Part shown: positions 4,873-25,627 of the stretch, piece after piece
Position numbering within the stretch: the first letter of the stretch is position 1
How the letters are laid out: each line of letters opens with the position of its first letter
Virus record (IMG/VR): IMGVR_UViG_3300029922_000001
Location: 1-64,000 of that record
Direction: 5' to 3' (one strand)
DNA length: 64,000 nt
The notes under the pieces: generated by a model
Told to the model about the DNA's origin: nothing
The model's input: the letters and a program-made list of their open reading frames with translations, nothing else
The model's database searches: none
Program-made: the position numbers and the translations under genes

Positions 4873-5756
4873 TGAAAAGATTTATTAAAGGATTGTATAA
4901 ACCAAATTACCCATGTGTTTTGTCAAGGTATTTTACAAATTTCAGTAAACTCAGAAAGATGAAAATTCTTTCTGAGGACTTCATAGTAGATTTCGCTGAT
5001 GATTTAGATTGGTTTTACCTAAGTGAAGAACAGCCTTTGTCTGAAGACTTCATTCGAAGATTTCAGGATAAAGTTAATTGGCATAATATATCTGAATCTC
5101 AGAAGTTATCAGAAGACTTTATTAGAGAATTTAAAGAAAAAGTTGATTGGTATTATATTTCAATGTATCAGAAGTTATCAGAAGATTTTATGAGGGAATT
5201 TCAAGATGAAATACACTGGCACTATGCGTGTAAACATCAAAAAATGTCCGTAGATTTCATGAGAGAGTTTAAGGATAATATGCTATGGGATTATGTATCA
5301 AAATATCAGAATTTATCAGAAAGCTTTAAACTTGAATTTAGTAATTTCCTTTTCAAGAGAATGTTAAATCCACAAAATAATTGGCTTTATCGCTCTGTGT
5401 ATTCTAAACGTCAGCACCTTTTGGATTATTATGAATTGGATGGTGATTATATTATCGCCTATAAAACTACTCGTAAAAATGGATATTCAGTATTCAATTT
5501 CCAGCATAGATATGAAGTTGGAAAGGAATATGAAGCACATTGTGATTTTAATGCCGATAATGAGGCTAGTTTTGGATTAAGTGCTTGGACTAGAGAAAAT
5601 GCATTAAGATATCATAGTCGTGGTGATCTTTATGAAGTTCGAATTCACCTTGATGATGCTGTTAAAGTGGATAGCTATCACAAGATTCGATGTTCAAAAT
5701 TCACAGTCGTAAGAAAACTAAAGATTAAACGTAGAGAAAGAAAAGCTTCAGACTAA
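4869..5756 (+). CDS. 22-aa Trp-repeat protein (LSEDFIREFxDKVxW) with conserved phage C-terminal domain
   Basis: About six tandem repeats followed by a YKTTR...YEVGKEYE...FGLS domain. Confidence 0.75.
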   Translation: MMKRFIKGLYKPNYPCVLSRYFTNFSKLRKMKILSEDFIVDFADDLDWFYLSEEQPLSEDFIRRFQDKVNWHNISESQKLSEDFIREFKEKVDWYYISMYQKLSEDFMREFQDEIHWHYACKHQKMSVDFMREFKDNMLWDYVSKYQNLSESFKLEFSNFLFKRMLNPQNNWLYRSVYSKRQHLLDYYELDGDYIIAYKTTRKNGYSVFNFQHRYEVGKEYEAHCDFNADNEASFGLSAWTRENALRYHSRGDLYEVRIHLDDAVKVDSYHKIRCSKFTVVRKLKIKRRERKASD

Positions 5757-6553
5757 TTAGTTTGAAGCTTTTCTTTGAATCTTGATATTACATTGAGTAA
5801 ATGTACATTGAGTTTACTATCAATGTCGAGTTCGTCCCAGAGAGGTTGTACTGATTCTGGATACTTTGCTTCATAAAGTGAAGCCGCAATAGCCGCATTT
5901 GTGTCTGTGTCTCCACCAAAGCTAATTGCTAATCTAATTACCTCTTCAATGCTAGTGCCGTTGAAAAACGAATGTAGAATGACTGGCATACAAGCTTCAC
6001 AGCTTGCCATGTGTAATTTACTAATTTTCTTCTTGTTAACTGTTTTCCATTTATAATCGCTAGTTCTTTTAATGAAGTCATTAATATACTTTTTACTTTC
6101 ACCATTGCGAAGATAAAAAATGGCTGCTGCAATTGTATTACTAGCCATTAAAGATTCTTCATGTCTATGTGTATACATAATTGATTTAGTAACATTAAGA
6201 AGAGTTCGTTCAATGGTTTTTTCGGTGTGTCCGATTGGACTAATTCGCATAATACAGCCATTGCCATAACTATCTAATTTAGTCATTTTTTCATGTGATG
6301 GGGTTGATGCCCATGTTCTAAATGCTTTACCATATCCTAGCTTCGGATAGACTTCGTAATATGCTTTATAGTATTCAGCAAAATTTTCTGAAGTGGGTTT
6401 TGGAAATTCTAAAAGAACTTCGGCTGTAGCACAAGTAAGTGCTGTATCGTCTGTAAAGTGAATATTGGGTGTATTCATTTCGAAATTAATATCGACTTCT
6501 GGTTGTGCTTCGAATACACTACCGATAATATCGCCTAAAATAGCTCCGCGCAT
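5753..6553 (-). CDS. ADP-ribosylglycohydrolase (DraG/ARH family)
   Basis: GAILGDIIGS, FTDDT, GNGCIMRISP and GGDTDT motifs; start moved to ATG 6553 (TATAAT-N6-ATG on the minus strand). Confidence 0.9.
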   Translation of the reverse strand: MRGAILGDIIGSVFEAQPEVDINFEMNTPNIHFTDDTALTCATAEVLLEFPKPTSENFAEYYKAYYEVYPKLGYGKAFRTWASTPSHEKMTKLDSYGNGCIMRISPIGHTEKTIERTLLNVTKSIMYTHRHEESLMASNTIAAAIFYLRNGESKKYINDFIKRTSDYKWKTVNKKKISKLHMASCEACMPVILHSFFNGTSIEEVIRLAISFGGDTDTNAAIAASLYEAKYPESVQPLWDELDIDSKLNVHLLNVISRFKEKLQTN

Positions 6554-6590
6554 TATGCTATTATACCTCAATATAAGATATAATAGAGGA

Positions 6591-7055
6591 ATGGAAACTA
6601 AACAAGTCATAGTAGTAAGAACACAATACCCAGATGGGAAAGGTGGAACTAAAAAGCTTAGAACGGGAAAACTCATAGCTCAAGCGGCTCATGCTTCAAT
6701 GTCTTTTTTGACGCGAAGAATTAATGCTAGATTAAATAGTGTTTCATATAAAGATGTTGATGGTGAGCCAATTGCATATATTGTTGAAGGACCATTGTAT
6801 GCAAATTTTTGTTTAACTCCAGAAGAAGAACATTGGTTAGATAATTCTTTTAAGAAAATTTGTGTGTATGTTAATTCTGAAGAAGAATTATTAGATATTT
6901 ATAATAAAGCTAAAGAAGCTGGATTAGAAGTACATCTTGTTGAGGATTCAGGGCTTACGGAATTTCATGGAGAGAAAACTAATACTTGTCTTGCAATTGG
7001 TCCACATGAATCTTCTCGAATTGATGTAATTACTGGTCATTTACCTTTATACTAA
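6591..7055 (+). CDS. pth2: peptidyl-tRNA hydrolase, Pth2 type
   Basis: KQVIVVR, GKLIAQAAHAS, KKICV, DSGLTE, TCLAIGP and IDxITGHLPL; start moved to ATG 6591. Confidence 0.92.
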   Translation: METKQVIVVRTQYPDGKGGTKKLRTGKLIAQAAHASMSFLTRRINARLNSVSYKDVDGEPIAYIVEGPLYANFCLTPEEEHWLDNSFKKICVYVNSEEELLDIYNKAKEAGLEVHLVEDSGLTEFHGEKTNTCLAIGPHESSRIDVITGHLPLY

Positions 7056-7458: not shown

Positions 7459-7530
7459 TCACAATATGGTGTTATGTTGACATACTTCCTGTGGTGGGAG
7501 AGATGTAAGTTCAATTCTTGCTGTTGTGAC
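7459..7530 (+). tRNA. tRNA-His(GTG)-like, irregular anticodon arm
   Basis: Acceptor TCACAATA/TGTTGTGA; T arm GTAAG-TTCAATT-CTTGC; anticodon region CTTCC-TGTGGT-GGGAG (TGG/Pro reading less likely). Confidence 0.6.
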
Positions 7531-7541
7531 CGAGATATATA

Positions 7542-7607
7542 CTAGGATGCCCAAGGTGGGAATTGCGGTTGTGACCCGCAATGACGGGATCGTTACCCGG
7601 TCCTAGA
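7542..7607 (+). tRNA. tRNA-His(GTG), compact
   Basis: Acceptor CTAGGAT/GTCCTAG; anticodon arm TTGCGG-TTGTGAC-CCGCAA; T arm CGGG-ATCGTTA-CCCG. Confidence 0.7.
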
Positions 7608-7619
7608 CGAGAAAAAAAT

Positions 7620-7701
7620 GGCGTAGCGATGCAGTTGGAGAGGCATGACGGTCTGTAAAATCGTTCCTTCGGGTGAATCGGTTCGAATCCGATATGCGCC
7701 A
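7620..7701 (+). tRNA. tRNA-Tyr(GTA)
   Basis: Anticodon loop CTGTAAA; long variable arm CCTTCGGG; T arm ATCGG-TTCGAAT-CCGAT. Confidence 0.85.
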
Positions 7702-7717
7702 CCGAGATAAAATAAAA

Positions 7718-7789
7718 CGGGATATAGCCAAGTGGTATGGCGCGAAGTTAGGGGCTTCGAGTTCTGGTGTTCGATTCACCATATCCCGA
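7718..7789 (+). tRNA. tRNA-Pro(AGG)
   Basis: Acceptor CGGGATA/TATCCCG plus A73; anticodon arm CGAAG-TTAGGGG-CTTCG; T arm TGGTG-TTCGATT-CACCA. Confidence 0.85.
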
Positions 7790-7800
7790 CGAGAATAAAT

Positions 7801-7880
7801 GGACGTATCGCATAGCGGCAATTGCGGAAGGCTGTAACCCTTCTCCTTCGGGTTCGTAAGTTCGAGTCTTACTGCGTCCA
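7801..7880 (+). tRNA. tRNA-Tyr(GTA)
   Basis: Acceptor GGACGTA/TGCGTCC; anticodon arm GAAGG-CTGTAAC-CCTTC; variable arm CCTTCGGG. Confidence 0.9.
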
Positions 7881-7890
7881 CGAGATAAAT

Positions 7891-7962
7891 CTAGTTGTAT
7901 ATCAATTGGTAGATTTCGCCGTTTGGATCGGTGAGGCTGGAGGTTCGAGTCCTCTCAACTAC
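7891..7962 (+). tRNA. tRNA-Pro(TGG), 3' end lacks G72/A73
   Basis: Anticodon arm CGCCG-TTTGGAT-CGGTG; T arm GGAGG-TTCGAGT-CCTCT; acceptor TAGTTG/CAACTA. Confidence 0.75.
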
Positions 7963-7974
7963 GAGATAAAATAT

Positions 7975-11646: not shown

Positions 11647-12102
11647 ATGAATAAGTCTTGGCTAACTGCTATAAGTAGAAAAAAACTTCCCGCTCCTACT
11701 AATTATCTGTTATCTAGTGGACTTTTAAAAGGTCGTGTTTTAGATTATGGCTGTGGAAGATGCCAAAACATAAACACTCAAAATGGTATCAAATATAATT
11801 ACGATCCTTATTACGTACCAGAAGGTAGACAAGGTAAGATGAATGTGATACTTTGCAATTACGTTTTAAATGTAGTGAATTTTGAAACTAGATTAGATAT
11901 ATTACAGGACTTATTTCATTTATTAGACAAAAATGGAGTAATATATTTAACAGTCAGAAGAGATATTACTTGTGATTACAACACCAAATTGGGGACTTTT
12001 CAGTATGTTGTGAAACTCCCATTTGAAACATTTCATAAAACAAAAACATATGAAACATATAAAATTTCTAAATATGACATACACGAGTATTTAACATCAT
12101 GA
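11647..12102 (+). CDS. class I SAM-dependent methyltransferase
   Basis: TAISRKKLPAP, VLDYGCG, YDPYY and CNYVLNV motifs. Confidence 0.8.
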   Translation: MNKSWLTAISRKKLPAPTNYLLSSGLLKGRVLDYGCGRCQNINTQNGIKYNYDPYYVPEGRQGKMNVILCNYVLNVVNFETRLDILQDLFHLLDKNGVIYLTVRRDITCDYNTKLGTFQYVVKLPFETFHKTKTYETYKISKYDIHEYLTS

Positions 12103-12330: not shown

Positions 12331-12651
12331 ATGGATTTAAGAATTATCTATTTACAAAATGATTATGCGGTTATGTATTGCAATAATGAATTAGTTCTCG
12401 AAGGTGATCCTCAAGAGTGGACCCTAGAATTAATACTTAAACAATTAAGTAATAATAGCAAAATTGTCAATTATACAATGGAAATGGAAGAATACACTTC
12501 TACATTGAACTATAAAATGCCAGATAAATTCGCTGATGTAGAATCTTTATTGGAATTGAAATTAGACTTTACAATGGATTCACTTAAAGATTTTTCCAAG
12601 ACGCAAAACTTAGTGAAAATATTGAAAGATAAGGTGTGGCAAGAAATATAA
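12331..12651 (+). CDS. hypothetical protein
   Basis: TATAAT-N5-ATG. Confidence 0.6.
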   Translation: MDLRIIYLQNDYAVMYCNNELVLEGDPQEWTLELILKQLSNNSKIVNYTMEMEEYTSTLNYKMPDKFADVESLLELKLDFTMDSLKDFSKTQNLVKILKDKVWQEI

Positions 12652-12671
12652 GTTTATGCTATAATGAGTGC

Positions 12672-13289
12672 ATGAAAACGTACCCATCTATTGTTACACT
12701 AAATAAAAATAAAAGCGAACCTATAGAAATGTGGGTATTTGATAAGTTGGATGGTTCTAACTTGCGTTTTGAATGGCATCGTAAGCGTGGATGGGGTAAA
12801 TTTGGCACTAGAACCCGTTTATTTGACCGTACAGACCCTACATTTGGTTGTGCCATTGATTTGTTCTTAAACAAATATAGTGAGGATTTAGAGAGGATTT
12901 TTAGAAAACAAAACTTCGAAGAAACTACAGTATTTTGTGAGTTCTGGGGACAGAGTTCTTTTGCTGGGCAGCACGTTGAAAGCGAACCTAAAAACGTCAC
13001 TTTGTTTGATGTTGATGTATTCAAAAAGTGTATTATTGGACCAAGACAATTTTTGGATTTATTCGGTCATTTAGATCATGCACCATATTTAGGAAAACAT
13101 ATATGGGATCAAGATTTTATTCAGGCAGTATACAATCAAGAAATTGAAGGTATGTCATTAGAAGGTGTTGTTGGCAAGGCTGGCGAAGGTCATCATTTGA
13201 AAATGTACAAGGCAAAAACAAAAGAATGGTTGGATTTGATTCGTGCTAGATACGATGAAGCTACTGCTAATCAGTTAATCAATAGTTGA
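12672..13289 (+). CDS. RNA ligase (Rnl2-like nucleotidyltransferase domain)
   Basis: Motif I KLDGSN, then EFWG, LFDV, EGVV and KAK; start moved to ATG 12672 (TGcTATAAT-N6-ATG). Confidence 0.75.
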   Translation: MKTYPSIVTLNKNKSEPIEMWVFDKLDGSNLRFEWHRKRGWGKFGTRTRLFDRTDPTFGCAIDLFLNKYSEDLERIFRKQNFEETTVFCEFWGQSSFAGQHVESEPKNVTLFDVDVFKKCIIGPRQFLDLFGHLDHAPYLGKHIWDQDFIQAVYNQEIEGMSLEGVVGKAGEGHHLKMYKAKTKEWLDLIRARYDEATANQLINS

Positions 13290-14199: not shown

Positions 14200-14502
14200 A
14201 TGGCTATTACAGAACAAGAAATACAAAATGCTTTATCAGAACAACAAATTCAAGATATTGGATATATCACCAGTGTATTGGATAAAAAATTAATTTCCAA
14301 TTATGGAAAATTAAAAAATGGCGAAGTGTTGAGATTTAGTTTAAATAAAAAATACAATCGAATTGTAACTGATGCAGTTTGTAAATCTTATGAACAAGCG
14401 GGTTGGGAATGTAGTGCTTACGATAATAAAGTTTATTATGGTATGTGGAGTAGTGGTCGTCCAATAAGTGAATTTGGTTTTCGTAAGCCAAAACAAAAAT
14501 GA
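14200..14502 (+). CDS. small hypothetical protein, homologous to the N-terminal domain of the capsid paralog
   Basis: MAITEQEI...LDKKL...RF...YEQAGW versus MPIGPQEI...IDKKL...RF...YQSVGW. Confidence 0.65.
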   Translation: MAITEQEIQNALSEQQIQDIGYITSVLDKKLISNYGKLKNGEVLRFSLNKKYNRIVTDAVCKSYEQAGWECSAYDNKVYYGMWSSGRPISEFGFRKPKQK

Positions 14503-14649
14503 CCCTGTTTAACCAGAGTCATTTAGCTACTGCAACCTTCGTTGTATAGGAACCAATATGTAATAATAGGAAAACAAAACCGTTTTATAACTATTTTGGA
14601 AAAAATCTTCGAAAGTTGGAAAAAACTAAGGAACATGGGTATAATATGA

Positions 14650-14720
14650 TTGTTAAGGGCTGTCGTCATTGGATTATCTAGGCTAAAAAAACTCCAAAGA
14701 CAAACAATTTGCTCTGATAA
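14650..14720 (+). ncRNA. candidate Y-like RNA 1 (Ro60-associated)
   Basis: 5' and 3' ends pair (AGGGC/GCTCT, TGT/ACA, internal loop with C, GTC/GAC, TTGGA/TCCAA); starts just after TATAAT 14640-14645; loop contains TTATCTA. Confidence 0.45.
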
Positions 14721-14725
14721 AGTTT

Positions 14726-14805
14726 AATATGGACTGATTGAATAGGTTTATCGCTTATCTAAAACGATCCTTCGGGATTTAACCTTTCAGACTTTTGTTC
14801 ATGTT
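14726..14805 (+). ncRNA. candidate Y-like RNA 2 (Ro60-associated)
   Basis: Terminal stem AATATGGAC/GTTCATGTT; inner stem AGGTT/AACCT; apical hairpins ATCG/CGAT (loop with TTATCTA) and ATCC-TTCG-GGAT. Confidence 0.5.
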
Positions 14806-14817
14806 TATTTTAAAAGG

Positions 14818-14857
14818 GCAAGTGCTTCACTGGATAGTGAGGAACTTGCTTTTTTTT
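14818..14857 (+). terminator. intrinsic terminator between candidate Y RNAs and ro60
   Basis: GCAAGT-GCTTCACT-GGAT-AGTGAGG-AACTTGC followed by T8. Confidence 0.75.
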
Positions 14858-14877
14858 CGAGTTAGGAGAATAAAATA

Positions 14878-16542
14878 ATGAGTAAAATCGCACAATACGT
14901 AGGAAATCGTAATAAAAACAAAAACAAGATCGTCAAACCATATATCTCTCAGGGACAACCTTATGACGAAACACAAGTTAAGAACTCCAATGGAGGATAC
15001 GTATATAAAGTCGGTAATTGGGATCAATTAGTAAGATTTCTCATTTTGGGAACAATTTCAGGAACTTACTACATCAAAGAAAGTGAACTAACTGTTCTAA
15101 ATTATGATGTCATCTTGGATTGTCTCAAAGAAGATGGCGTAAGAGTTGTAAATGAAATTTTGCGTGTGTCTGAAGGTGGATTGGCACCTAAAAATGATTT
15201 TGCAGTTTTTGCACTTGCAGTTGCTGCCGCACATGGTAATGAACAAACTAAACAACTAGCTTATGAAGTCTTGCCAAGAGTATGCCGTATTGCAACACAT
15301 TTATTCCAATTTTTGGAAGATTCTAAAGCATTTAGAGGACGTGGTAACGGTTTTAATCGTGCTATTCGTCGTTGGTACACTAATAAAACCATTGATCAAC
15401 AAGCTTATCAAATGGTTAAATATCGTTCACGAAACAGTTGGTCACACCGTGACGTGTTGAGAACAATACGTATCAAACCAGAAAACGTTGAAGCATCCGC
15501 TTTATATGGTTGGGCTGTTACTGGAGAATGGAAGCCAGGTAAGATTGAAATTAATGTTGATGGTCATGTACTATTACTATCAAATGGCTTTGATGTTGCT
15601 AAGCCAAAGATTATTGAAGGATTTGAAAAGTCCCAAGCTGCTACTTCTACTAGTGAACTAGTTAAGGTAATTAAGCAATATGATCTTACATGGGAAGCTG
15701 TGCCAACACAGTATCTTAAAGATAAGAGTGTATGGGAAGCTTTGCTATCCAACACTCCCCCAATTGCTTTGATGCGTAATCTTGGTAATATGTCTAGTGC
15801 CGGTGTCTTTGATGCTGGTGAGTGGGATAATACCAAATTAGCAATTGATACTTTAACTAATGTTGAAAAACTTAGAAAGAATCATTGTCACCCTATGCAG
15901 TCTGTAATTGCACAAATTACTTATGCTCATGGTGGAGGATTTAAGGGAAGTAACACTTGGGCTGTGAACCCCAAATTAGTCGATGCATTAAATGATTCGT
16001 TCTATGCATCAATGCAAGCAATTGTGCCAACTGGTAAGAAATTCCTAGTAGGTGTTGATGAATCTCAGTCTATGACTCAGGCTAGTGCTGTTTCAGGATT
16101 AAACTGTAAAGAAGCTGCGGCTATTATGGCATTAACTACTTACGTTGCGGAACCTAATTGTCAGGTTATCTTCTTCGATACCAAATATCGTGAAGAAGAA
16201 AAATTGAGTAAGCACATGAGTTTAAATGACGCTAAGAAACTCGCTCGTGATGGTGGAGGTACTAATTTGAACTTACCTATGCAATATGCATTGGATAAAA
16301 AGATTAAAGATATTGATGTCTTCGTTGTCTTCACTGACAATGAGACATATGGTAATGGACGACATACTCAAGACTTATTTAATGAATATCGTAATACATA
16401 TAATGCAAACGCCAAATTGATTGTATGTTCTATGATGGCTAATGTTTATACTGTAGGAGATATTAAAGATCCACAAATTCTTCAAGTAGTAGGTTTGGAT
16501 GCATCGCTCCCGAAAATAATTAGCTGTTTTGTTTTAGCGTAA
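14878..16542 (+). CDS. rsr: Ro60/Rsr TROVE-domain RNA-binding protein
   Basis: QVKNSNGGYVY, LVRFLILG..GTYY, KYRSRNSWSHRDVLR, ALMRNLG; vWA motifs DxSxSM, GGT, VFTDNET and VVGLD; AGGAG SD. Confidence 0.95.
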   Translation: MSKIAQYVGNRNKNKNKIVKPYISQGQPYDETQVKNSNGGYVYKVGNWDQLVRFLILGTISGTYYIKESELTVLNYDVILDCLKEDGVRVVNEILRVSEGGLAPKNDFAVFALAVAAAHGNEQTKQLAYEVLPRVCRIATHLFQFLEDSKAFRGRGNGFNRAIRRWYTNKTIDQQAYQMVKYRSRNSWSHRDVLRTIRIKPENVEASALYGWAVTGEWKPGKIEINVDGHVLLLSNGFDVAKPKIIEGFEKSQAATSTSELVKVIKQYDLTWEAVPTQYLKDKSVWEALLSNTPPIALMRNLGNMSSAGVFDAGEWDNTKLAIDTLTNVEKLRKNHCHPMQSVIAQITYAHGGGFKGSNTWAVNPKLVDALNDSFYASMQAIVPTGKKFLVGVDESQSMTQASAVSGLNCKEAAAIMALTTYVAEPNCQVIFFDTKYREEEKLSKHMSLNDAKKLARDGGGTNLNLPMQYALDKKIKDIDVFVVFTDNETYGNGRHTQDLFNEYRNTYNANAKLIVCSMMANVYTVGDIKDPQILQVVGLDASLPKIISCFVLA

Positions 16543-16578
16543 GTTGACAAAACACAGAATTTTAGGGCATAATATAAA

Positions 16579-16608
16579 AACGCAAGAAACTATTATGTTT
16601 CTTGCGTT
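16579..16608 (+). terminator. hairpin downstream of ro60
   Basis: AACGCAAGAAAC-TATTAT-GTTTCTTGCGTT. Confidence 0.6.
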
Positions 16609-16625
16609 AATCTAAAGGTGAAACA

Positions 16626-24429: not shown

Positions 24430-24514
24430 ATGAATTACTCTCACGAGTTTCTTGTTTCAATGACGCAACTATTGTTACAGTCTCCGCAAGCGTTTATTCG
24501 GATTATTCCAATCC
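24430..24514 (-). ncRNA. omegaRNA / right end of the TnpB element
   Basis: Minus strand reads GGATT-GGAAT-AATCC...AACGCTTGCGGAG...TGAAACAAGAA...GTAATTCAT, a typical IS200/IS605 3' end. Confidence 0.65.
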
Positions 24515-25627
24515 TATACATCTTATTAAATTTTGATATTGAAATGCCATCTTTTTAATATTAATTGATGCATTGATATCTCTATCGTGTTTAATCCCGC
24601 AAGGACAATTCCATTCACGATCTGATAATTTAAGTTCTTTATTGATCGTTCCACATGAATTACACATTTTAGAACTTGGTTCAAATCTTCCAATATCAAG
24701 CAGATTTTTACCATTCCAATCGCATTTGTATTTAAGAAAATCAAAAAACATTCCCCAAGATACGTCCGAGATTGATTTAGCTAAGCAATGATTTTTTAAC
24801 ATGTTTTTAATTGAAAGGTCTTCAATACAAAAAGTAGTAGCTTGACTCTCACTTACTAATTTTGTTGTAACCTTATGTAAAAAATCACGTCTTTGATTCG
24901 ATATATGCTCATGAATATGAGCAATTCTTTTCTTTTGTTTAGATCCGTTAGATCCTTTTTTCATTTTACTAAACTTATACTGTTCATAAGCTAATTTTTT
25001 TTGAGATTTCTTAAAAAATCTAGGATTATCTATAACCATTCCATCAGAAGTTGTTAAAAATCGAGATAATCCAACATCAATTCCAATTGCATTTTCTATT
25101 TTAAGTTCAGCTTTATTTGGAATGTCAATATTATTTTCAACAAGAACAGAAGCATAATAATGACCAATAGCATTTTTGCTAATAGTTATGGATTTAATGA
25201 TTCCTTCGAATTTTCTATCTATTTTTATTTTAATATGTTTAATTTTAGGTAAAAACAATGTTCGTGTATTCCAATTAATAGAACAAGACTGAGGACATTG
25301 AAATGATTGTTTAGAATTGTGTTTTGATTTAAATTTAGGAAAACCTTTCTTTTCTCTAAAAAATCTAGTATATGCATTATCTAAATTTCTTAATGAAGCT
25401 TGTAGTGATTGTGCATTAACTTCCTTTAACCAAACATTATCTTCCTTTAATTGCTTTAAATTATTTATTAAATCAAAACAAGATAGTGTTTTACTTTCTT
25501 GTTGATATGCTTTAATTTTATTTTCTAATCCCCAGTTGTAAATAAATCTACAAGCCCCAAAATGTTTATTAAACATTTCTTCTTGTTCTTTGTTTGGATA
25601 TATTCTATATTTAAAACCTTTTAACAC
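24503..25627 (-). mobile_element. tnpB: IS200/IS605-family TnpB RNA-guided nuclease (solo, no TnpA)
   Basis: KYRIYPNKEQ HTH; RuvC motifs GIDVG, IEDL and DRDINA intact; Cys-rich Zn finger. Confidence 0.93.

What the first reader, a model, noticed from the sequence alone, without database searches (positions are those of the whole stretch)
14640..16542. Ro60 preceded by two candidate non-canonical Y RNAs and an internal terminator
Seen: after TATAAT come two consecutive ~70-80 nt RNAs with paired 5'/3' ends, a pyrimidine-rich 3' bulge near the terminal stem and a shared loop heptamer TTATCTA. A U8 terminator follows, then the ro60 SD. Neither RNA has the GTTCGA T-arm mimic of YrlA. Inference: a new Y-RNA class made in excess of Ro60, or a structured leader through which Ro60 autoregulates read-through.
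Basis: partly seen in the sequence, partly recalled or inferred. Interest (0 to 1): 0.62.

Follow-up and report, generated by a model that had tools for sequence, protein, structure and literature searches.

The report
Two phage Y RNAs before ro60
A 441-kb peat phage carries, just upstream of its Ro60 gene, two tandem small RNAs that are AT-rich relatives of ordinary Y RNAs (the RNA partners of Ro60 from phages to humans), followed by a strong transcription terminator: a real but largely expected arrangement.

Summary
ORF 14878-16542 is Ro60 (TROVE + vWA_Ro60). Upstream lie a sigma-70-like promoter, two back-to-back stem-loop RNAs (14652-14720 and 14723-14807), a 19-bp hairpin with U8, then the ro60 ribosome-binding site.

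The "non-canonical, new class" reading does not hold. A covariance model built only from RNAs upstream of distant Ro60 genes finds RNA1 at 35.4 bits (E 7e-9 in the intergenic region) and RNA2 at 10.2 bits (E 0.015). A model of RNA2 finds those same distant RNAs in return. Both RNAs share the Y-RNA plan: a lower stem, an asymmetric internal loop, an upper stem, and a loop starting UUAUC.

They are stem-loop Y RNAs, not tRNA-like YrlA. Promoter, both RNAs and terminator recur in two diverged relatives (Ro60 65% and 59% identical), with compensatory changes.

The terminator is special to this clade: 50 of 52 distant loci have none. Two metatranscriptomes hold contigs over the RNAs, and one joins 14812 to 14652 head to tail.

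Ro60 binding and Ro60-controlled read-through remain inferred. Verdict: a new member of a known kind, of moderate interest.

The parts
14616..14645 (+). sigma-70-like promoter: -35 TTGGAA (14616-14621), 18-nt spacer, -10 TATAAT (14640-14645)
   Evidence: 10 of 12 matches. A -10 box sits at the same place in L004 (TACAAT) and L005 (TATAAT) in alignment A1.
14652..14652 (+). likely transcription start (G, 7 nt after the -10 box)
   Evidence: Inferred from promoter geometry. The same base is one side of the head-to-tail joint in an RNA-library contig.
14652..14720 (+). Y RNA 1: lower stem 14656-14660/14711-14715, internal loop (4 nt on the 5' side, 9 nt on the 3' side), upper stem 14665-14673/14693-14701 with an A.A mismatch, loop starting UUAUC at 14674
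   Evidence: Independent model R2: 35.4 bits, E 1.5e-6 in 80 kb and 7e-9 in the intergenic region. It is the only R2 hit in the 441-kb genome. The minimum-free-energy (MFE) fold gives the same structure in three lineages. Three compensatory pairs.
14723..14807 (+). Y RNA 2: lower stem 14726-14734/14797-14805, internal loop (3 nt / 6 nt), upper stem 14738-14748/14781-14790 with bulged U14743, UUAUC at 14748-14752 and again inside 14755-14761, extra UUCG hairpin 14766-14779
   Evidence: 19 pairs, 94.6% of cells paired, 5 compensatory pairs, 4 of 500 shuffles, 33-54% paired when slid. R2 gives 10.2 bits, E 0.015 in the intergenic region. Model R3, built from RNA2, finds the Y RNAs of distant loci in return.
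14812..14857 (+). intrinsic terminator: about 19-bp hairpin 14812-14849 and U8 14850-14857
   Evidence: -21.6 kcal/mol, z -5.0. Equivalent hairpins with U runs occur in L004 (z -4.9) and L005 (z -6.0), with different stem sequences. Absent from 50 of 52 distant Ro60 loci.
14864..14868 (+). ro60 Shine-Dalgarno AGGAG, 9 nt before the ATG
   Evidence: Read from the sequence. No promoter-like site lies between the terminator and the ATG.
14878..16542 (+). ro60 (554 aa)
   Evidence: Pfam TROVE 5.9e-33 and vWA_Ro60 3.1e-41. PDB Ro60 chains: 9nen 1.5e-88, 1yvp 2.1e-84, Rsr 2nvo 9e-72.
12636..13289 (+). RNA ligase (Rnl2-type nucleotidyltransferase domain), context gene three ORFs upstream
   Evidence: Pfam PF09414 30.1 bits, above its cut-off of 27. 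phrog_548 RNA ligase 3.5e-14. Also next to ro60 in L002/L003.

Best explanation
The intergenic region 14503-14877 holds two tandem Y RNA genes of the ordinary stem-loop type. Each has a lower stem formed by the 5' and 3' ends, an asymmetric internal loop with a U-rich 3' strand, an upper stem, and a loop that begins UUAUC. They are transcribed from their own sigma-70-like promoter, starting about G14652. Transcription mostly stops at the strong intrinsic terminator 14812-14857, which yields the small RNAs. Polymerases that read through give the ro60 mRNA, because ro60 has no promoter of its own between the terminator and its start codon. By analogy with D. radiodurans, Salmonella and Thermus phage phiLo, the phage Ro60 ring binds the lower stem and internal loop of each RNA. 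The RNA loops then tether Ro60 to a host exoribonuclease such as PNPase or gate its cavity; the phage encodes no PNPase or RNase PH domain. This would reshape RNA turnover or repair during infection, alongside the neighbouring RNA ligase and tRNA genes. Shown here: homology to Y RNAs, the conserved structure, and the conserved order promoter, two RNAs, terminator, ro60. Inferred: Ro60 binding, the exonuclease partner, the ratio of RNA to protein, and whether the two modules stay together as one 161-nt RNA.
For: ro60 is firmly identified. Distant Ro60 loci carry RNAs directly upstream that pass Rfam's sbRNA model (RF01656) and come near Y_RNA (RF00019). Model R1, built from five of them, gave 127 hits in 88 sources, all on the ro60 strand, including window 14644-14726. 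Model R2, built from 73 hits with the window clade left out, scores window RNA1 at 35.4 bits (E 1.5e-6), L004 RNA1 at 33.3 and L005 RNA1 at 18.3. It scores RNA2 of L004 at 14.9 bits and of the window at 10.2 bits, the latter E 0.015 when only the 375-nt intergenic region is searched. RNA1 is the only R2 hit in the 441-kb genome. Model R3, built from RNA2, hits 18 further places. All are on the ro60 strand and nearly all are where R1 had placed Y RNAs; one is RNA1 of L004. RNA2 has 5 compensatory pairs of 19 and RNA1 has 3 of 17, across only three lineages, and the signal collapses when partners are slid. MFE folds of each lineage give the same structures on their own. The family structure has overwhelming covariation, and 65 of 73 members carry UUAUC. 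RNA-library contigs lie over the region, and one joint marks ends at 14652 and 14812. Precedent exists: two Yrl RNAs upstream of phiLo ro60 bind it and form a complex with host PNPase (PMC12135203), and Y RNAs lie within 4 kb of ro60 on the same strand in 254 bacteria and 22 phages (PMC4201824).
Against: No Rfam family, including Y_RNA and the sbRNA family, matches the window even at E 10. The GNCGAA/CGAA motif thought to contact Ro60 is absent from the window RNAs (GCUGUC, ACUGAU); only L004 comes near it (GCUGAAG). RNA1 folds barely better than shuffled sequence (z -1.05). RNA2's score against the independent model is marginal outside a targeted search (E 3.3 in 80 kb). Only three independent lineages exist, so covariation counts are small. 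Expression evidence consists of short, low-depth contigs that could include DNA. Nothing here tests Ro60 binding.
Confidence: 0.75

Rival explanations
1. The region is mainly a cis-acting leader: a Ro60-sensing transcription attenuator. The 3' strand of the RNA1 lower stem (14708-14715, the presumed Ro60-binding helix) can pair with the 5' base of the terminator stem. That pairing extends the RNA2 basal helix and acts as an antiterminator. When Ro60 is plentiful it clamps the RNA1 stem, the terminator forms and ro60 read-through falls. When Ro60 is scarce, read-through rises. This could coexist with trans-acting Y RNAs.
For: When each sequence is folded only up to the terminator loop, the 5' half of the terminator pairs with that same RNA1 strand in all three lineages, gaining 6.6 to 10.7 kcal/mol, although the terminator sequences differ. 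Only 1 of 145 other terminator 5' halves from this genome both pairs with that strand and gains as much energy. The terminator is specific to this clade, and ro60 has no promoter of its own. Ribosomal-protein leaders that mimic the protein's RNA target work this way (established knowledge).
Against: 24% of unrelated terminator 5' halves also pair with that U/C-rich strand, and 4% gain as much energy. The three lineages are related, so they are not independent trials. The full-length fold favours the terminator by about 12 kcal/mol. The conserved GC base of the stem is what any good terminator needs. There are no data on read-through.
Confidence: 0.2
2. RNA1 and RNA2 are not two separate RNAs. 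They form one two-module 161-nt Y RNA (14652-14812), cut away from the terminator hairpin, which can bind two Ro60 rings. The molecule may be joined head to tail into a circle, perhaps by the neighbouring RNA ligase.
For: One RNA-library contig reads 14659-14812 and continues exactly at 14652, with no extra letters. That run has no contig over the flanks 14627-14651 or beyond 14812. Only 9-10 nt separate the two modules. phiLo Yrl1 also has two hairpin modules and binds Ro60 at more than one stoichiometry (PMC12135203). An Rnl2-type ligase gene lies three ORFs upstream.
Against: It is a single contig of depth 3.1. Head-to-tail joints can arise in library preparation or from a tandem duplication in a DNA variant. 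A primary 5' triphosphate end is not a ligase substrate without processing. Another RNA run has a contig running on into the terminator, to 14834.
Confidence: 0.15
3. The structures are chance hairpins in an AT-rich spacer, or some unrelated RNA element, and have nothing to do with Ro60.
For: Rfam gives no hit. RNA1's folding z-score is weak. The heptamer is common in the window.
Against: Independent covariance models hit both RNAs, on the right strand, back to back, and nowhere else in 441 kb. There are reciprocal hits and compensatory changes. The layout is conserved in lineages whose Ro60 is only 59-65% identical.
Confidence: 0.03

Closest known systems
Yrl1 and Yrl2 of Thermus phage phiLo (PMC12135203)
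   Same: Two Y-RNA-like stem-bulge-stem RNAs lie directly upstream of a phage ro60 on the same strand. The phage has no PNPase of its own, so a host exonuclease is the likely partner.
   Different: The phiLo RNAs carry the CGAA motif and were shown to bind phiRo60 and PNPase. The window RNAs lack CGAA, are AT-rich and are untested. A strong terminator between the RNAs and ro60 is not described for phiLo.
Stem-loop Y RNAs upstream of environmental phage and bacterial Ro60 genes (found here: L017-L096; they match Rfam RF01656 sbRNA and resemble RF00019 Y_RNA)
   Same: The same plan and order of motifs: lower stem, 3-4 nt / 6-9 nt internal loop, upper stem, UUAUC. They sit in tandem copies on the ro60 strand. 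The window RNAs align to their model over its full length.
   Different: Those RNAs are about 50% GC, mostly have GGGCCGAAG and CAACUUG, and end a median 49 nt before ro60 with no terminator. The window RNAs are 31-33% GC with degenerate motifs and a terminator, and RNA2 has an extra hairpin in its loop.
Vertebrate Y RNAs and nematode sbRNAs (PMC4726728)
   Same: A lower stem with a bulge or internal loop that binds Ro60, an upper stem, and a conserved UUAUC at the start of the loop.
   Different: Those are eukaryotic RNA polymerase III transcripts that end in a U run bound by La, and their UUAUC and upper stem are tied to DNA replication. Here a bacterial-type promoter and an intrinsic terminator are used.
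YrlA / Yrn1 bacterial Y RNAs (PMC4201824)
   Same: Encoded within 4 kb of ro60 on the same strand, and presumed to bind Ro60 through the 5' region of the stem.
   Different: YrlA has a tRNA-like domain (T and D arms) and the GNCGAAN0-1G motif. The window RNAs have neither.
Highly transcribed candidate ncRNAs upstream of the Rsr-like gene of Listeria phage CKA15 (PMC12282133)
   Same: A phage of a low-GC host with abundant small transcripts within 2 kb upstream of an Rsr-like gene, in the same direction.
   Different: In that phage, Y-RNA identity is only one of several suggestions and no structural homology was shown. I did not compare the sequences.

Membership tests
Y RNA (stem-loop type: Rfam RF00019 / RF01656-like, prokaryotic and phage Ro60-linked) | Encoded close to ro60 on the same strand | tested here: met
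   Both RNAs lie 70-226 nt upstream of the ro60 ATG on the + strand. All 127 R1 hits in other loci are also on the ro60 strand.
Y RNA (stem-loop type: Rfam RF00019 / RF01656-like, prokaryotic and phage Ro60-linked) | 5' and 3' ends pair into a lower stem, followed by an asymmetric internal loop or bulge and an upper stem, all supported by covariation | tested here: met
   RNA2: 94.6% paired, 5 compensatory pairs; RNA1: 82.4% paired, 3 compensatory pairs; MFE folds in three lineages.
Y RNA (stem-loop type: Rfam RF00019 / RF01656-like, prokaryotic and phage Ro60-linked) | Significant match to a covariance model of known or independent family members | tested here: met
   R2, built without the window clade: RNA1 35.4 bits, E 1.5e-6; RNA2 10.2 bits, E 0.015 in the targeted region but E 3.3 in 80 kb. 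Reciprocal hits with R3. RNA2 alone would count as borderline.
Y RNA (stem-loop type: Rfam RF00019 / RF01656-like, prokaryotic and phage Ro60-linked) | Reaches the curated Rfam gathering score (RF00019 or RF01656) | tested here: not met
   Neither family matches at E up to 10 on 14450-14950, while distant loci do pass RF01656. I read this as divergence through AT richness, not exclusion. Rfam's seeds are eukaryotic.
Y RNA (stem-loop type: Rfam RF00019 / RF01656-like, prokaryotic and phage Ro60-linked) | Ro60-contact motif GGUCCGA / GNCGAAN0-1G (CGAA) on the 5' strand | tested here: inconclusive
   Window RNA1 has GCUGUCG and RNA2 has ACUGAUUG. L004 has GCUGAAG and ACUGAAU. The motif is missing from 19 of 73 independent family members too, so it is typical rather than universal.
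Y RNA (stem-loop type: Rfam RF00019 / RF01656-like, prokaryotic and phage Ro60-linked) | UUAUC at the 5' start of the loop | tested here: met
   14674-14678 and 14748-14752. It sits at the same position in L004 and L005 and in 65 of 73 family members.
Y RNA (stem-loop type: Rfam RF00019 / RF01656-like, prokaryotic and phage Ro60-linked) | Bound by Ro60; accumulates as a discrete small RNA | not testable with these tools
   Only indirect evidence: contigs from two RNA libraries over the region, and a joint marking ends at 14652 and 14812.
YrlA (tRNA-like bacterial Y RNA) | Internal tRNA-like domain with T-arm and D-arm mimics | tested here: not met
   No tRNA-model or ARAGORN hit in 14450-14950, and the loops are only 19 and 32 nt long. 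Some distant loci do show Y stems enclosing a tRNA-model hit (L085).
Intrinsic (factor-independent) terminator | Stable GC-containing hairpin followed at once by a U run, conserved in position | tested here: met
   (z -5.0, -4.9, -6.0 in three lineages). The stem sequences differ while the pairing is kept. Termination itself was not measured.
Protein-responsive transcription attenuator (r-protein-leader type) | Mutually exclusive antiterminator and terminator pairings, with the protein's binding site controlling the choice | tested here: inconclusive
   The alternative pairing is present in all three lineages, but the genome-wide null gives only 1-24% depending on the criterion.

The most novel reading that the evidence does not exclude
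The locus produces one two-module, 161-nt Y RNA (14652-14812) that is released from the terminator hairpin and joined head to tail into a circular RNA, possibly by the adjacent phage RNA ligase. That would make a nuclease-resistant scaffold for two Ro60 rings. This rests on a single exact 14812|14652 joint in one metatranscriptome contig.
Probability: 0.08. Interest if true: 0.75.

Novelty: new member of a known kind. Interest (0 to 1): 0.4.

Why it matters
It extends Ro60-linked Y RNAs to a very large (441 kb), AT-rich environmental phage whose RNAs escape every curated model. It also shows how to find such RNAs: build the model from the RNAs upstream of other Ro60 genes. That the motif persists in phage RNAs next to ro60 suggests a Ro60-related role, not only the DNA-replication role assigned to it in animals. 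The clade-specific terminator gives a simple system, testable in vitro, for asking whether Ro60 controls its own synthesis through a Y-RNA-like leader.

Tried and rejected
Rfam at gathering score on the whole window, and at E 10 on 14450-14950, gave only tRNAs at 7460-7964 and chance miRNA/sRNA matches to the terminator.

Megablast of the locus against GenBank phages found nothing. tblastn found only Ro60 genes under 40% identical, in actinophages.

A close-relative scan of IMG/VR with Ro60 peptides found nothing. Two DNA-pattern scans of IMG/VR for the RNA motifs gave only chance hits in coding sequence.

The one metagenome scan returned only Ro60 genes 37-41% identical. They gave no clade members, but they served as the independent training set.

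MAFFT misaligned the 3' strand of RNA1 by one column in L004, so RNA1 pairs were counted on the model-fitted alignment A8, which leans towards the structure.

The L006 relative (54% Ro60 identity) has a GC-rich upstream region with a terminator but no model hit.

A first terminator null drawn from the window alone had only 3 cases, so it was redone on the whole genome.

The idea that the terminator is a third Y module scored only 5 bits with R1 and was dropped.

A PDB sequence search for the RNA ligase found nothing. The review PMC10870794 is not held. I did not use the large protein-representative search, structure prediction or complex prediction, because the protein's identity was never in doubt.
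Full report
**What is there**

The window is the first 64 kb of a 441,498-bp virus record (33.9% GC) from peat metagenomes. ORF 14878-16542 (+, 554 aa) is Ro60. It matches Pfam TROVE (5.9e-33) and vWA_Ro60 (3.1e-41). It also matches solved Ro60 chains: 9nen 1.5e-88, X. laevis 1yvp 2.1e-84 and D. radiodurans Rsr 2nvo 9e-72.

The 375-nt gap upstream of ro60 holds no ORF of 40 aa or more on the + strand. It contains, in order:
- a -35/-10 pair: TTGGAA at 14616 and TATAAT at 14640-14645;
- two adjacent stem-loop RNAs;
- a hairpin at 14812-14849 followed by eight U (-21.6 kcal/mol, z -5.0);
- AGGAG at 14864 and the ATG at 14878.

No promoter-like site lies between the terminator and the ATG.

**Relatives keep the same layout**

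A word-based protein search found only a handful of close Ro60 relatives. I fetched their contigs.
- L002 and L003 (Ro60 95% identical) have a nearly identical upstream region.
- L004 (65%) and L005 (59%) have diverged, but keep a -10 box, two RNAs, a hairpin with a U run, and the ribosome-binding site in the same order and spacing.

Insertions and deletions between the lineages are not multiples of three: a 14-nt duplication in the L004 RNA1 loop and an 11-nt insert in L005. That argues against coding sequence.

**The key lead came from distant loci**

One metagenome scan returned 80 loci whose Ro60 is only 37-41% identical. I ran Rfam on 20 of them as a control. In 6 of the 20, an RNA directly upstream of ro60 on the same strand passed the gathering score of RF01656, the nematode stem-bulge RNAs, which are Y RNA homologues. 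The L031 example, scanned at a permissive threshold, also matched RF00019 (Y_RNA) at 29.9 bits, below its gathering score of 38.

Their consensus is:
- an 8-bp lower stem;
- an internal loop of 4 nt (CGAA) on the 5' side and 8 nt (ACCAACUU) on the 3' side;
- a 9-bp upper stem ending UGGG;
- a loop that begins UUAUC.

UUAUC is the loop motif conserved in vertebrate Y RNAs and sbRNAs (PMC4726728). CGAA is the motif linked to Ro60 contact (PMC4201824, PMC12135203).

**Membership test with independent models**

- **R1** was built from five distant RNAs. It gave 127 hits in 88 sources, every one on the ro60 strand, including window 14644-14726 (24.3 bits).
- **R2** was rebuilt from 73 hits with the window clade left out. 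It scores window RNA1 at 35.4 bits (E 1.5e-6 in 80 kb), L004 RNA1 at 33.3 bits and L005 RNA1 at 18.3 bits. It scores RNA2 of L004 at 14.9 bits and RNA2 of the window at 10.2 bits.
- Searching only the 375-nt intergenic region, both strands, gives E 7e-9 for RNA1 and E 0.015 for RNA2. The two hits sit back to back at 14644-14726 and 14727-14812, and nothing else falls below E 1.
- In the whole 441-kb genome, RNA1 is the only R2 hit.
- **R3** was built from the three RNA2 sequences. Outside its own training set it finds 18 places, all on the ro60 strand. Nearly all coincide with the Y RNAs that R1 had placed in distant loci, and one is RNA1 of L004.

The two window RNAs are thus paralogues of each other and homologues of the common Ro60-linked stem-loop Y RNAs.

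**Structure support**

Folded alone, each RNA of each lineage gives the same architecture.
- RNA2: 19 pairs, 94.6% of cells paired, 5 pairs with changes on both sides in only three sequences, 4 of 500 shuffles as good, and 33-54% paired when partners are slid.
- RNA1, on the model-fitted alignment: 17 pairs, 82.4% paired, 3 compensatory pairs.
- The 73-member family: 95.4% paired, 258 double-change cells, 0 of 500 shuffles.

**What does not fit**

- Rfam itself does not see the window RNAs, even at E 10.
- The CGAA motif is degenerate here (UGUC in RNA1 and UGAU in RNA2; L004 keeps UGAA). It is also missing from 19 of 73 family members.
- RNA1's folding energy is unremarkable (z -1.05).
- There is no tRNA-like domain, so these are not YrlA.

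**The terminator**

In 52 distant loci, the last Y RNA ends a median 49 nt before ro60, and 50 of the 52 have no terminator-like hairpin in between. The window, L004 and L005 all have a very stable one (z -5 to -6). The upper stems differ in sequence but stay paired. The next nearest relative, L007, has six Y-like elements followed by a small terminator-like site.

The simplest reading is that most transcripts end here as small RNA, and that ro60 is made from read-through.

A more interesting possibility also emerged. I folded each sequence only up to the terminator loop. In all three lineages, the 5' half of the terminator then pairs with the 3' strand of the RNA1 lower stem (14708-14715). 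This extends the RNA2 basal helix and gains 6.6-10.7 kcal/mol. If Ro60 clamps that stem, it could decide between terminator and antiterminator.

I tested this against 145 other terminator 5' halves from the same genome:
- 4% gain as much energy;
- 24% pair with that strand;
- 0.7% do both.

This is suggestive and no more. The three lineages are not independent trials, and the complete fold favours the terminator.

**Expression**

The stretch occurs in many peat metagenomes, and small parts of it occur in two peat metatranscriptomes. Only assembled contigs could be laid.
- Run X9 has pieces over 14686-14834 and two pieces inside ro60.
- Run X14 has 14468-14626 and a 186-nt contig that reads 14659-14812 and then continues exactly at 14652. 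It has nothing over the flanks 14627-14651 or beyond 14812.

Position 14652 is the G 7 nt after the -10 box, which I had taken as the likely start before seeing the reads. Position 14812 is the first base of the terminator stem. The joint therefore marks the ends of a 161-nt RNA1+RNA2 molecule. Whether it reflects a circular RNA, a concatemer made during library preparation, or a DNA variant cannot be decided from one contig of depth 3.1.

**Context**

- An Rnl2-type RNA ligase lies three ORFs upstream.
- A tRNA cluster lies at 7460-7964.
- The genome has no RtcB and no RNase PH/PNPase domain, so any exonuclease partner would be the host's, as proposed for phiLo.

**Comparison with the known**

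- Y RNAs within 4 kb of ro60 on the same strand are known in 254 bacteria and 22 phages (PMC4201824).
- Thermus phage phiLo has two Yrl RNAs upstream of ro60 that bind it and host PNPase (PMC12135203).
- Jumbo phages with TROVE proteins have been noted (PMC7824862).
- Abundant candidate ncRNAs upstream of an Rsr-like gene are reported in Listeria phage CKA15 (PMC12282133).

The window adds a divergent, AT-rich member with a clade-specific terminator.

**Verdict**

Novelty: a new member of a known kind. Interest: 0.4.

Noticed in passing
L017-L096, mostly locus positions about 1280-1500; L007:1832-2864; L008:1277-1878: A large family of stem-loop Y RNAs sits upstream of environmental phage and bacterial ro60 genes, always on the ro60 strand, in tandem arrays of one to six copies. 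The RNAs pass Rfam's gathering score for nematode sbRNAs (RF01656), and 65 of 73 carry the UUAUC of vertebrate Y RNAs. A 2015 review calls bacterial Y RNAs not homologous to the vertebrate ones (PMC4726728), so this close resemblance may deserve its own study.
   Followed up: partly
window 14652 and 14812 (run X14): An exact head-to-tail joint 14812|14652 occurs in one metatranscriptome contig (186 nt, depth 3.1). It marks a 161-nt RNA1+RNA2 species. A circular RNA, a library artefact or a tandem duplication cannot be told apart.
   Followed up: partly
window 14674-14680 and 14755-14761; L004 near 2003 and 2091; L005 near 2035 and 2115: The extended UUAUC motif is identical in the two RNAs of each genome but differs between genomes (UUAUCUA, UUAUCUU, UUUAUCAU). 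This hints at gene conversion between the paralogues or at a shared partner that co-evolves with them.
   Followed up: no
window 16544-16625: Right after the ro60 stop lie a near-consensus promoter (TTGACA, 18 nt, CATAAT) and a 12-bp hairpin (16579-16608), before the next small ORF. This hairpin and the ro60 terminator are the only two GCAAG...CTTGC hairpins in the 64-kb window, and they flank ro60.
   Followed up: partly
window 12636-13289 (+): A short (217 aa) Rnl2-type RNA ligase lies three ORFs upstream of the Y RNAs and is conserved there in L002/L003. A weak methyltransferase hit lies at 11647-12102. The genome has no RtcB and no RNase PH/PNPase domain.
   Followed up: partly
window 7460-7964 (+): A cluster of five or six tRNA genes (His, Tyr x2, Pro x2, plus one seen only by Rfam at 7460-7529) lies about 7 kb upstream of ro60. 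Many distant ro60 loci also sit beside tRNA arrays.
   Followed up: no
window 24503-25627 (-) and 5753-6676 (-): An IS605 OrfB/TnpB-like gene (OrfB_IS605 5.4e-25, Cas12f1-like TNB 8.6e-21) and an ADP-ribosylglycohydrolase (1.1e-29) lie in the phage genome.
   Followed up: no
L085:1362-1504; L020:811-956; L038:1107-1248: Some Y-model hits are 120-165 nt long, and one encloses a tRNA-model hit (L085 1397-1469). These look like YrlA-type tRNA-like Y RNAs sitting beside short stem-loop Y RNAs in the same locus.
   Followed up: no
L006:1-238: The 54%-identical Ro60 relative has a GC-rich upstream region with a terminator-like hairpin about 45 nt before its ATG, but no hit to any Y model. The contig starts only 238 nt upstream, so Y RNAs further upstream would be missed.
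   Followed up: partly
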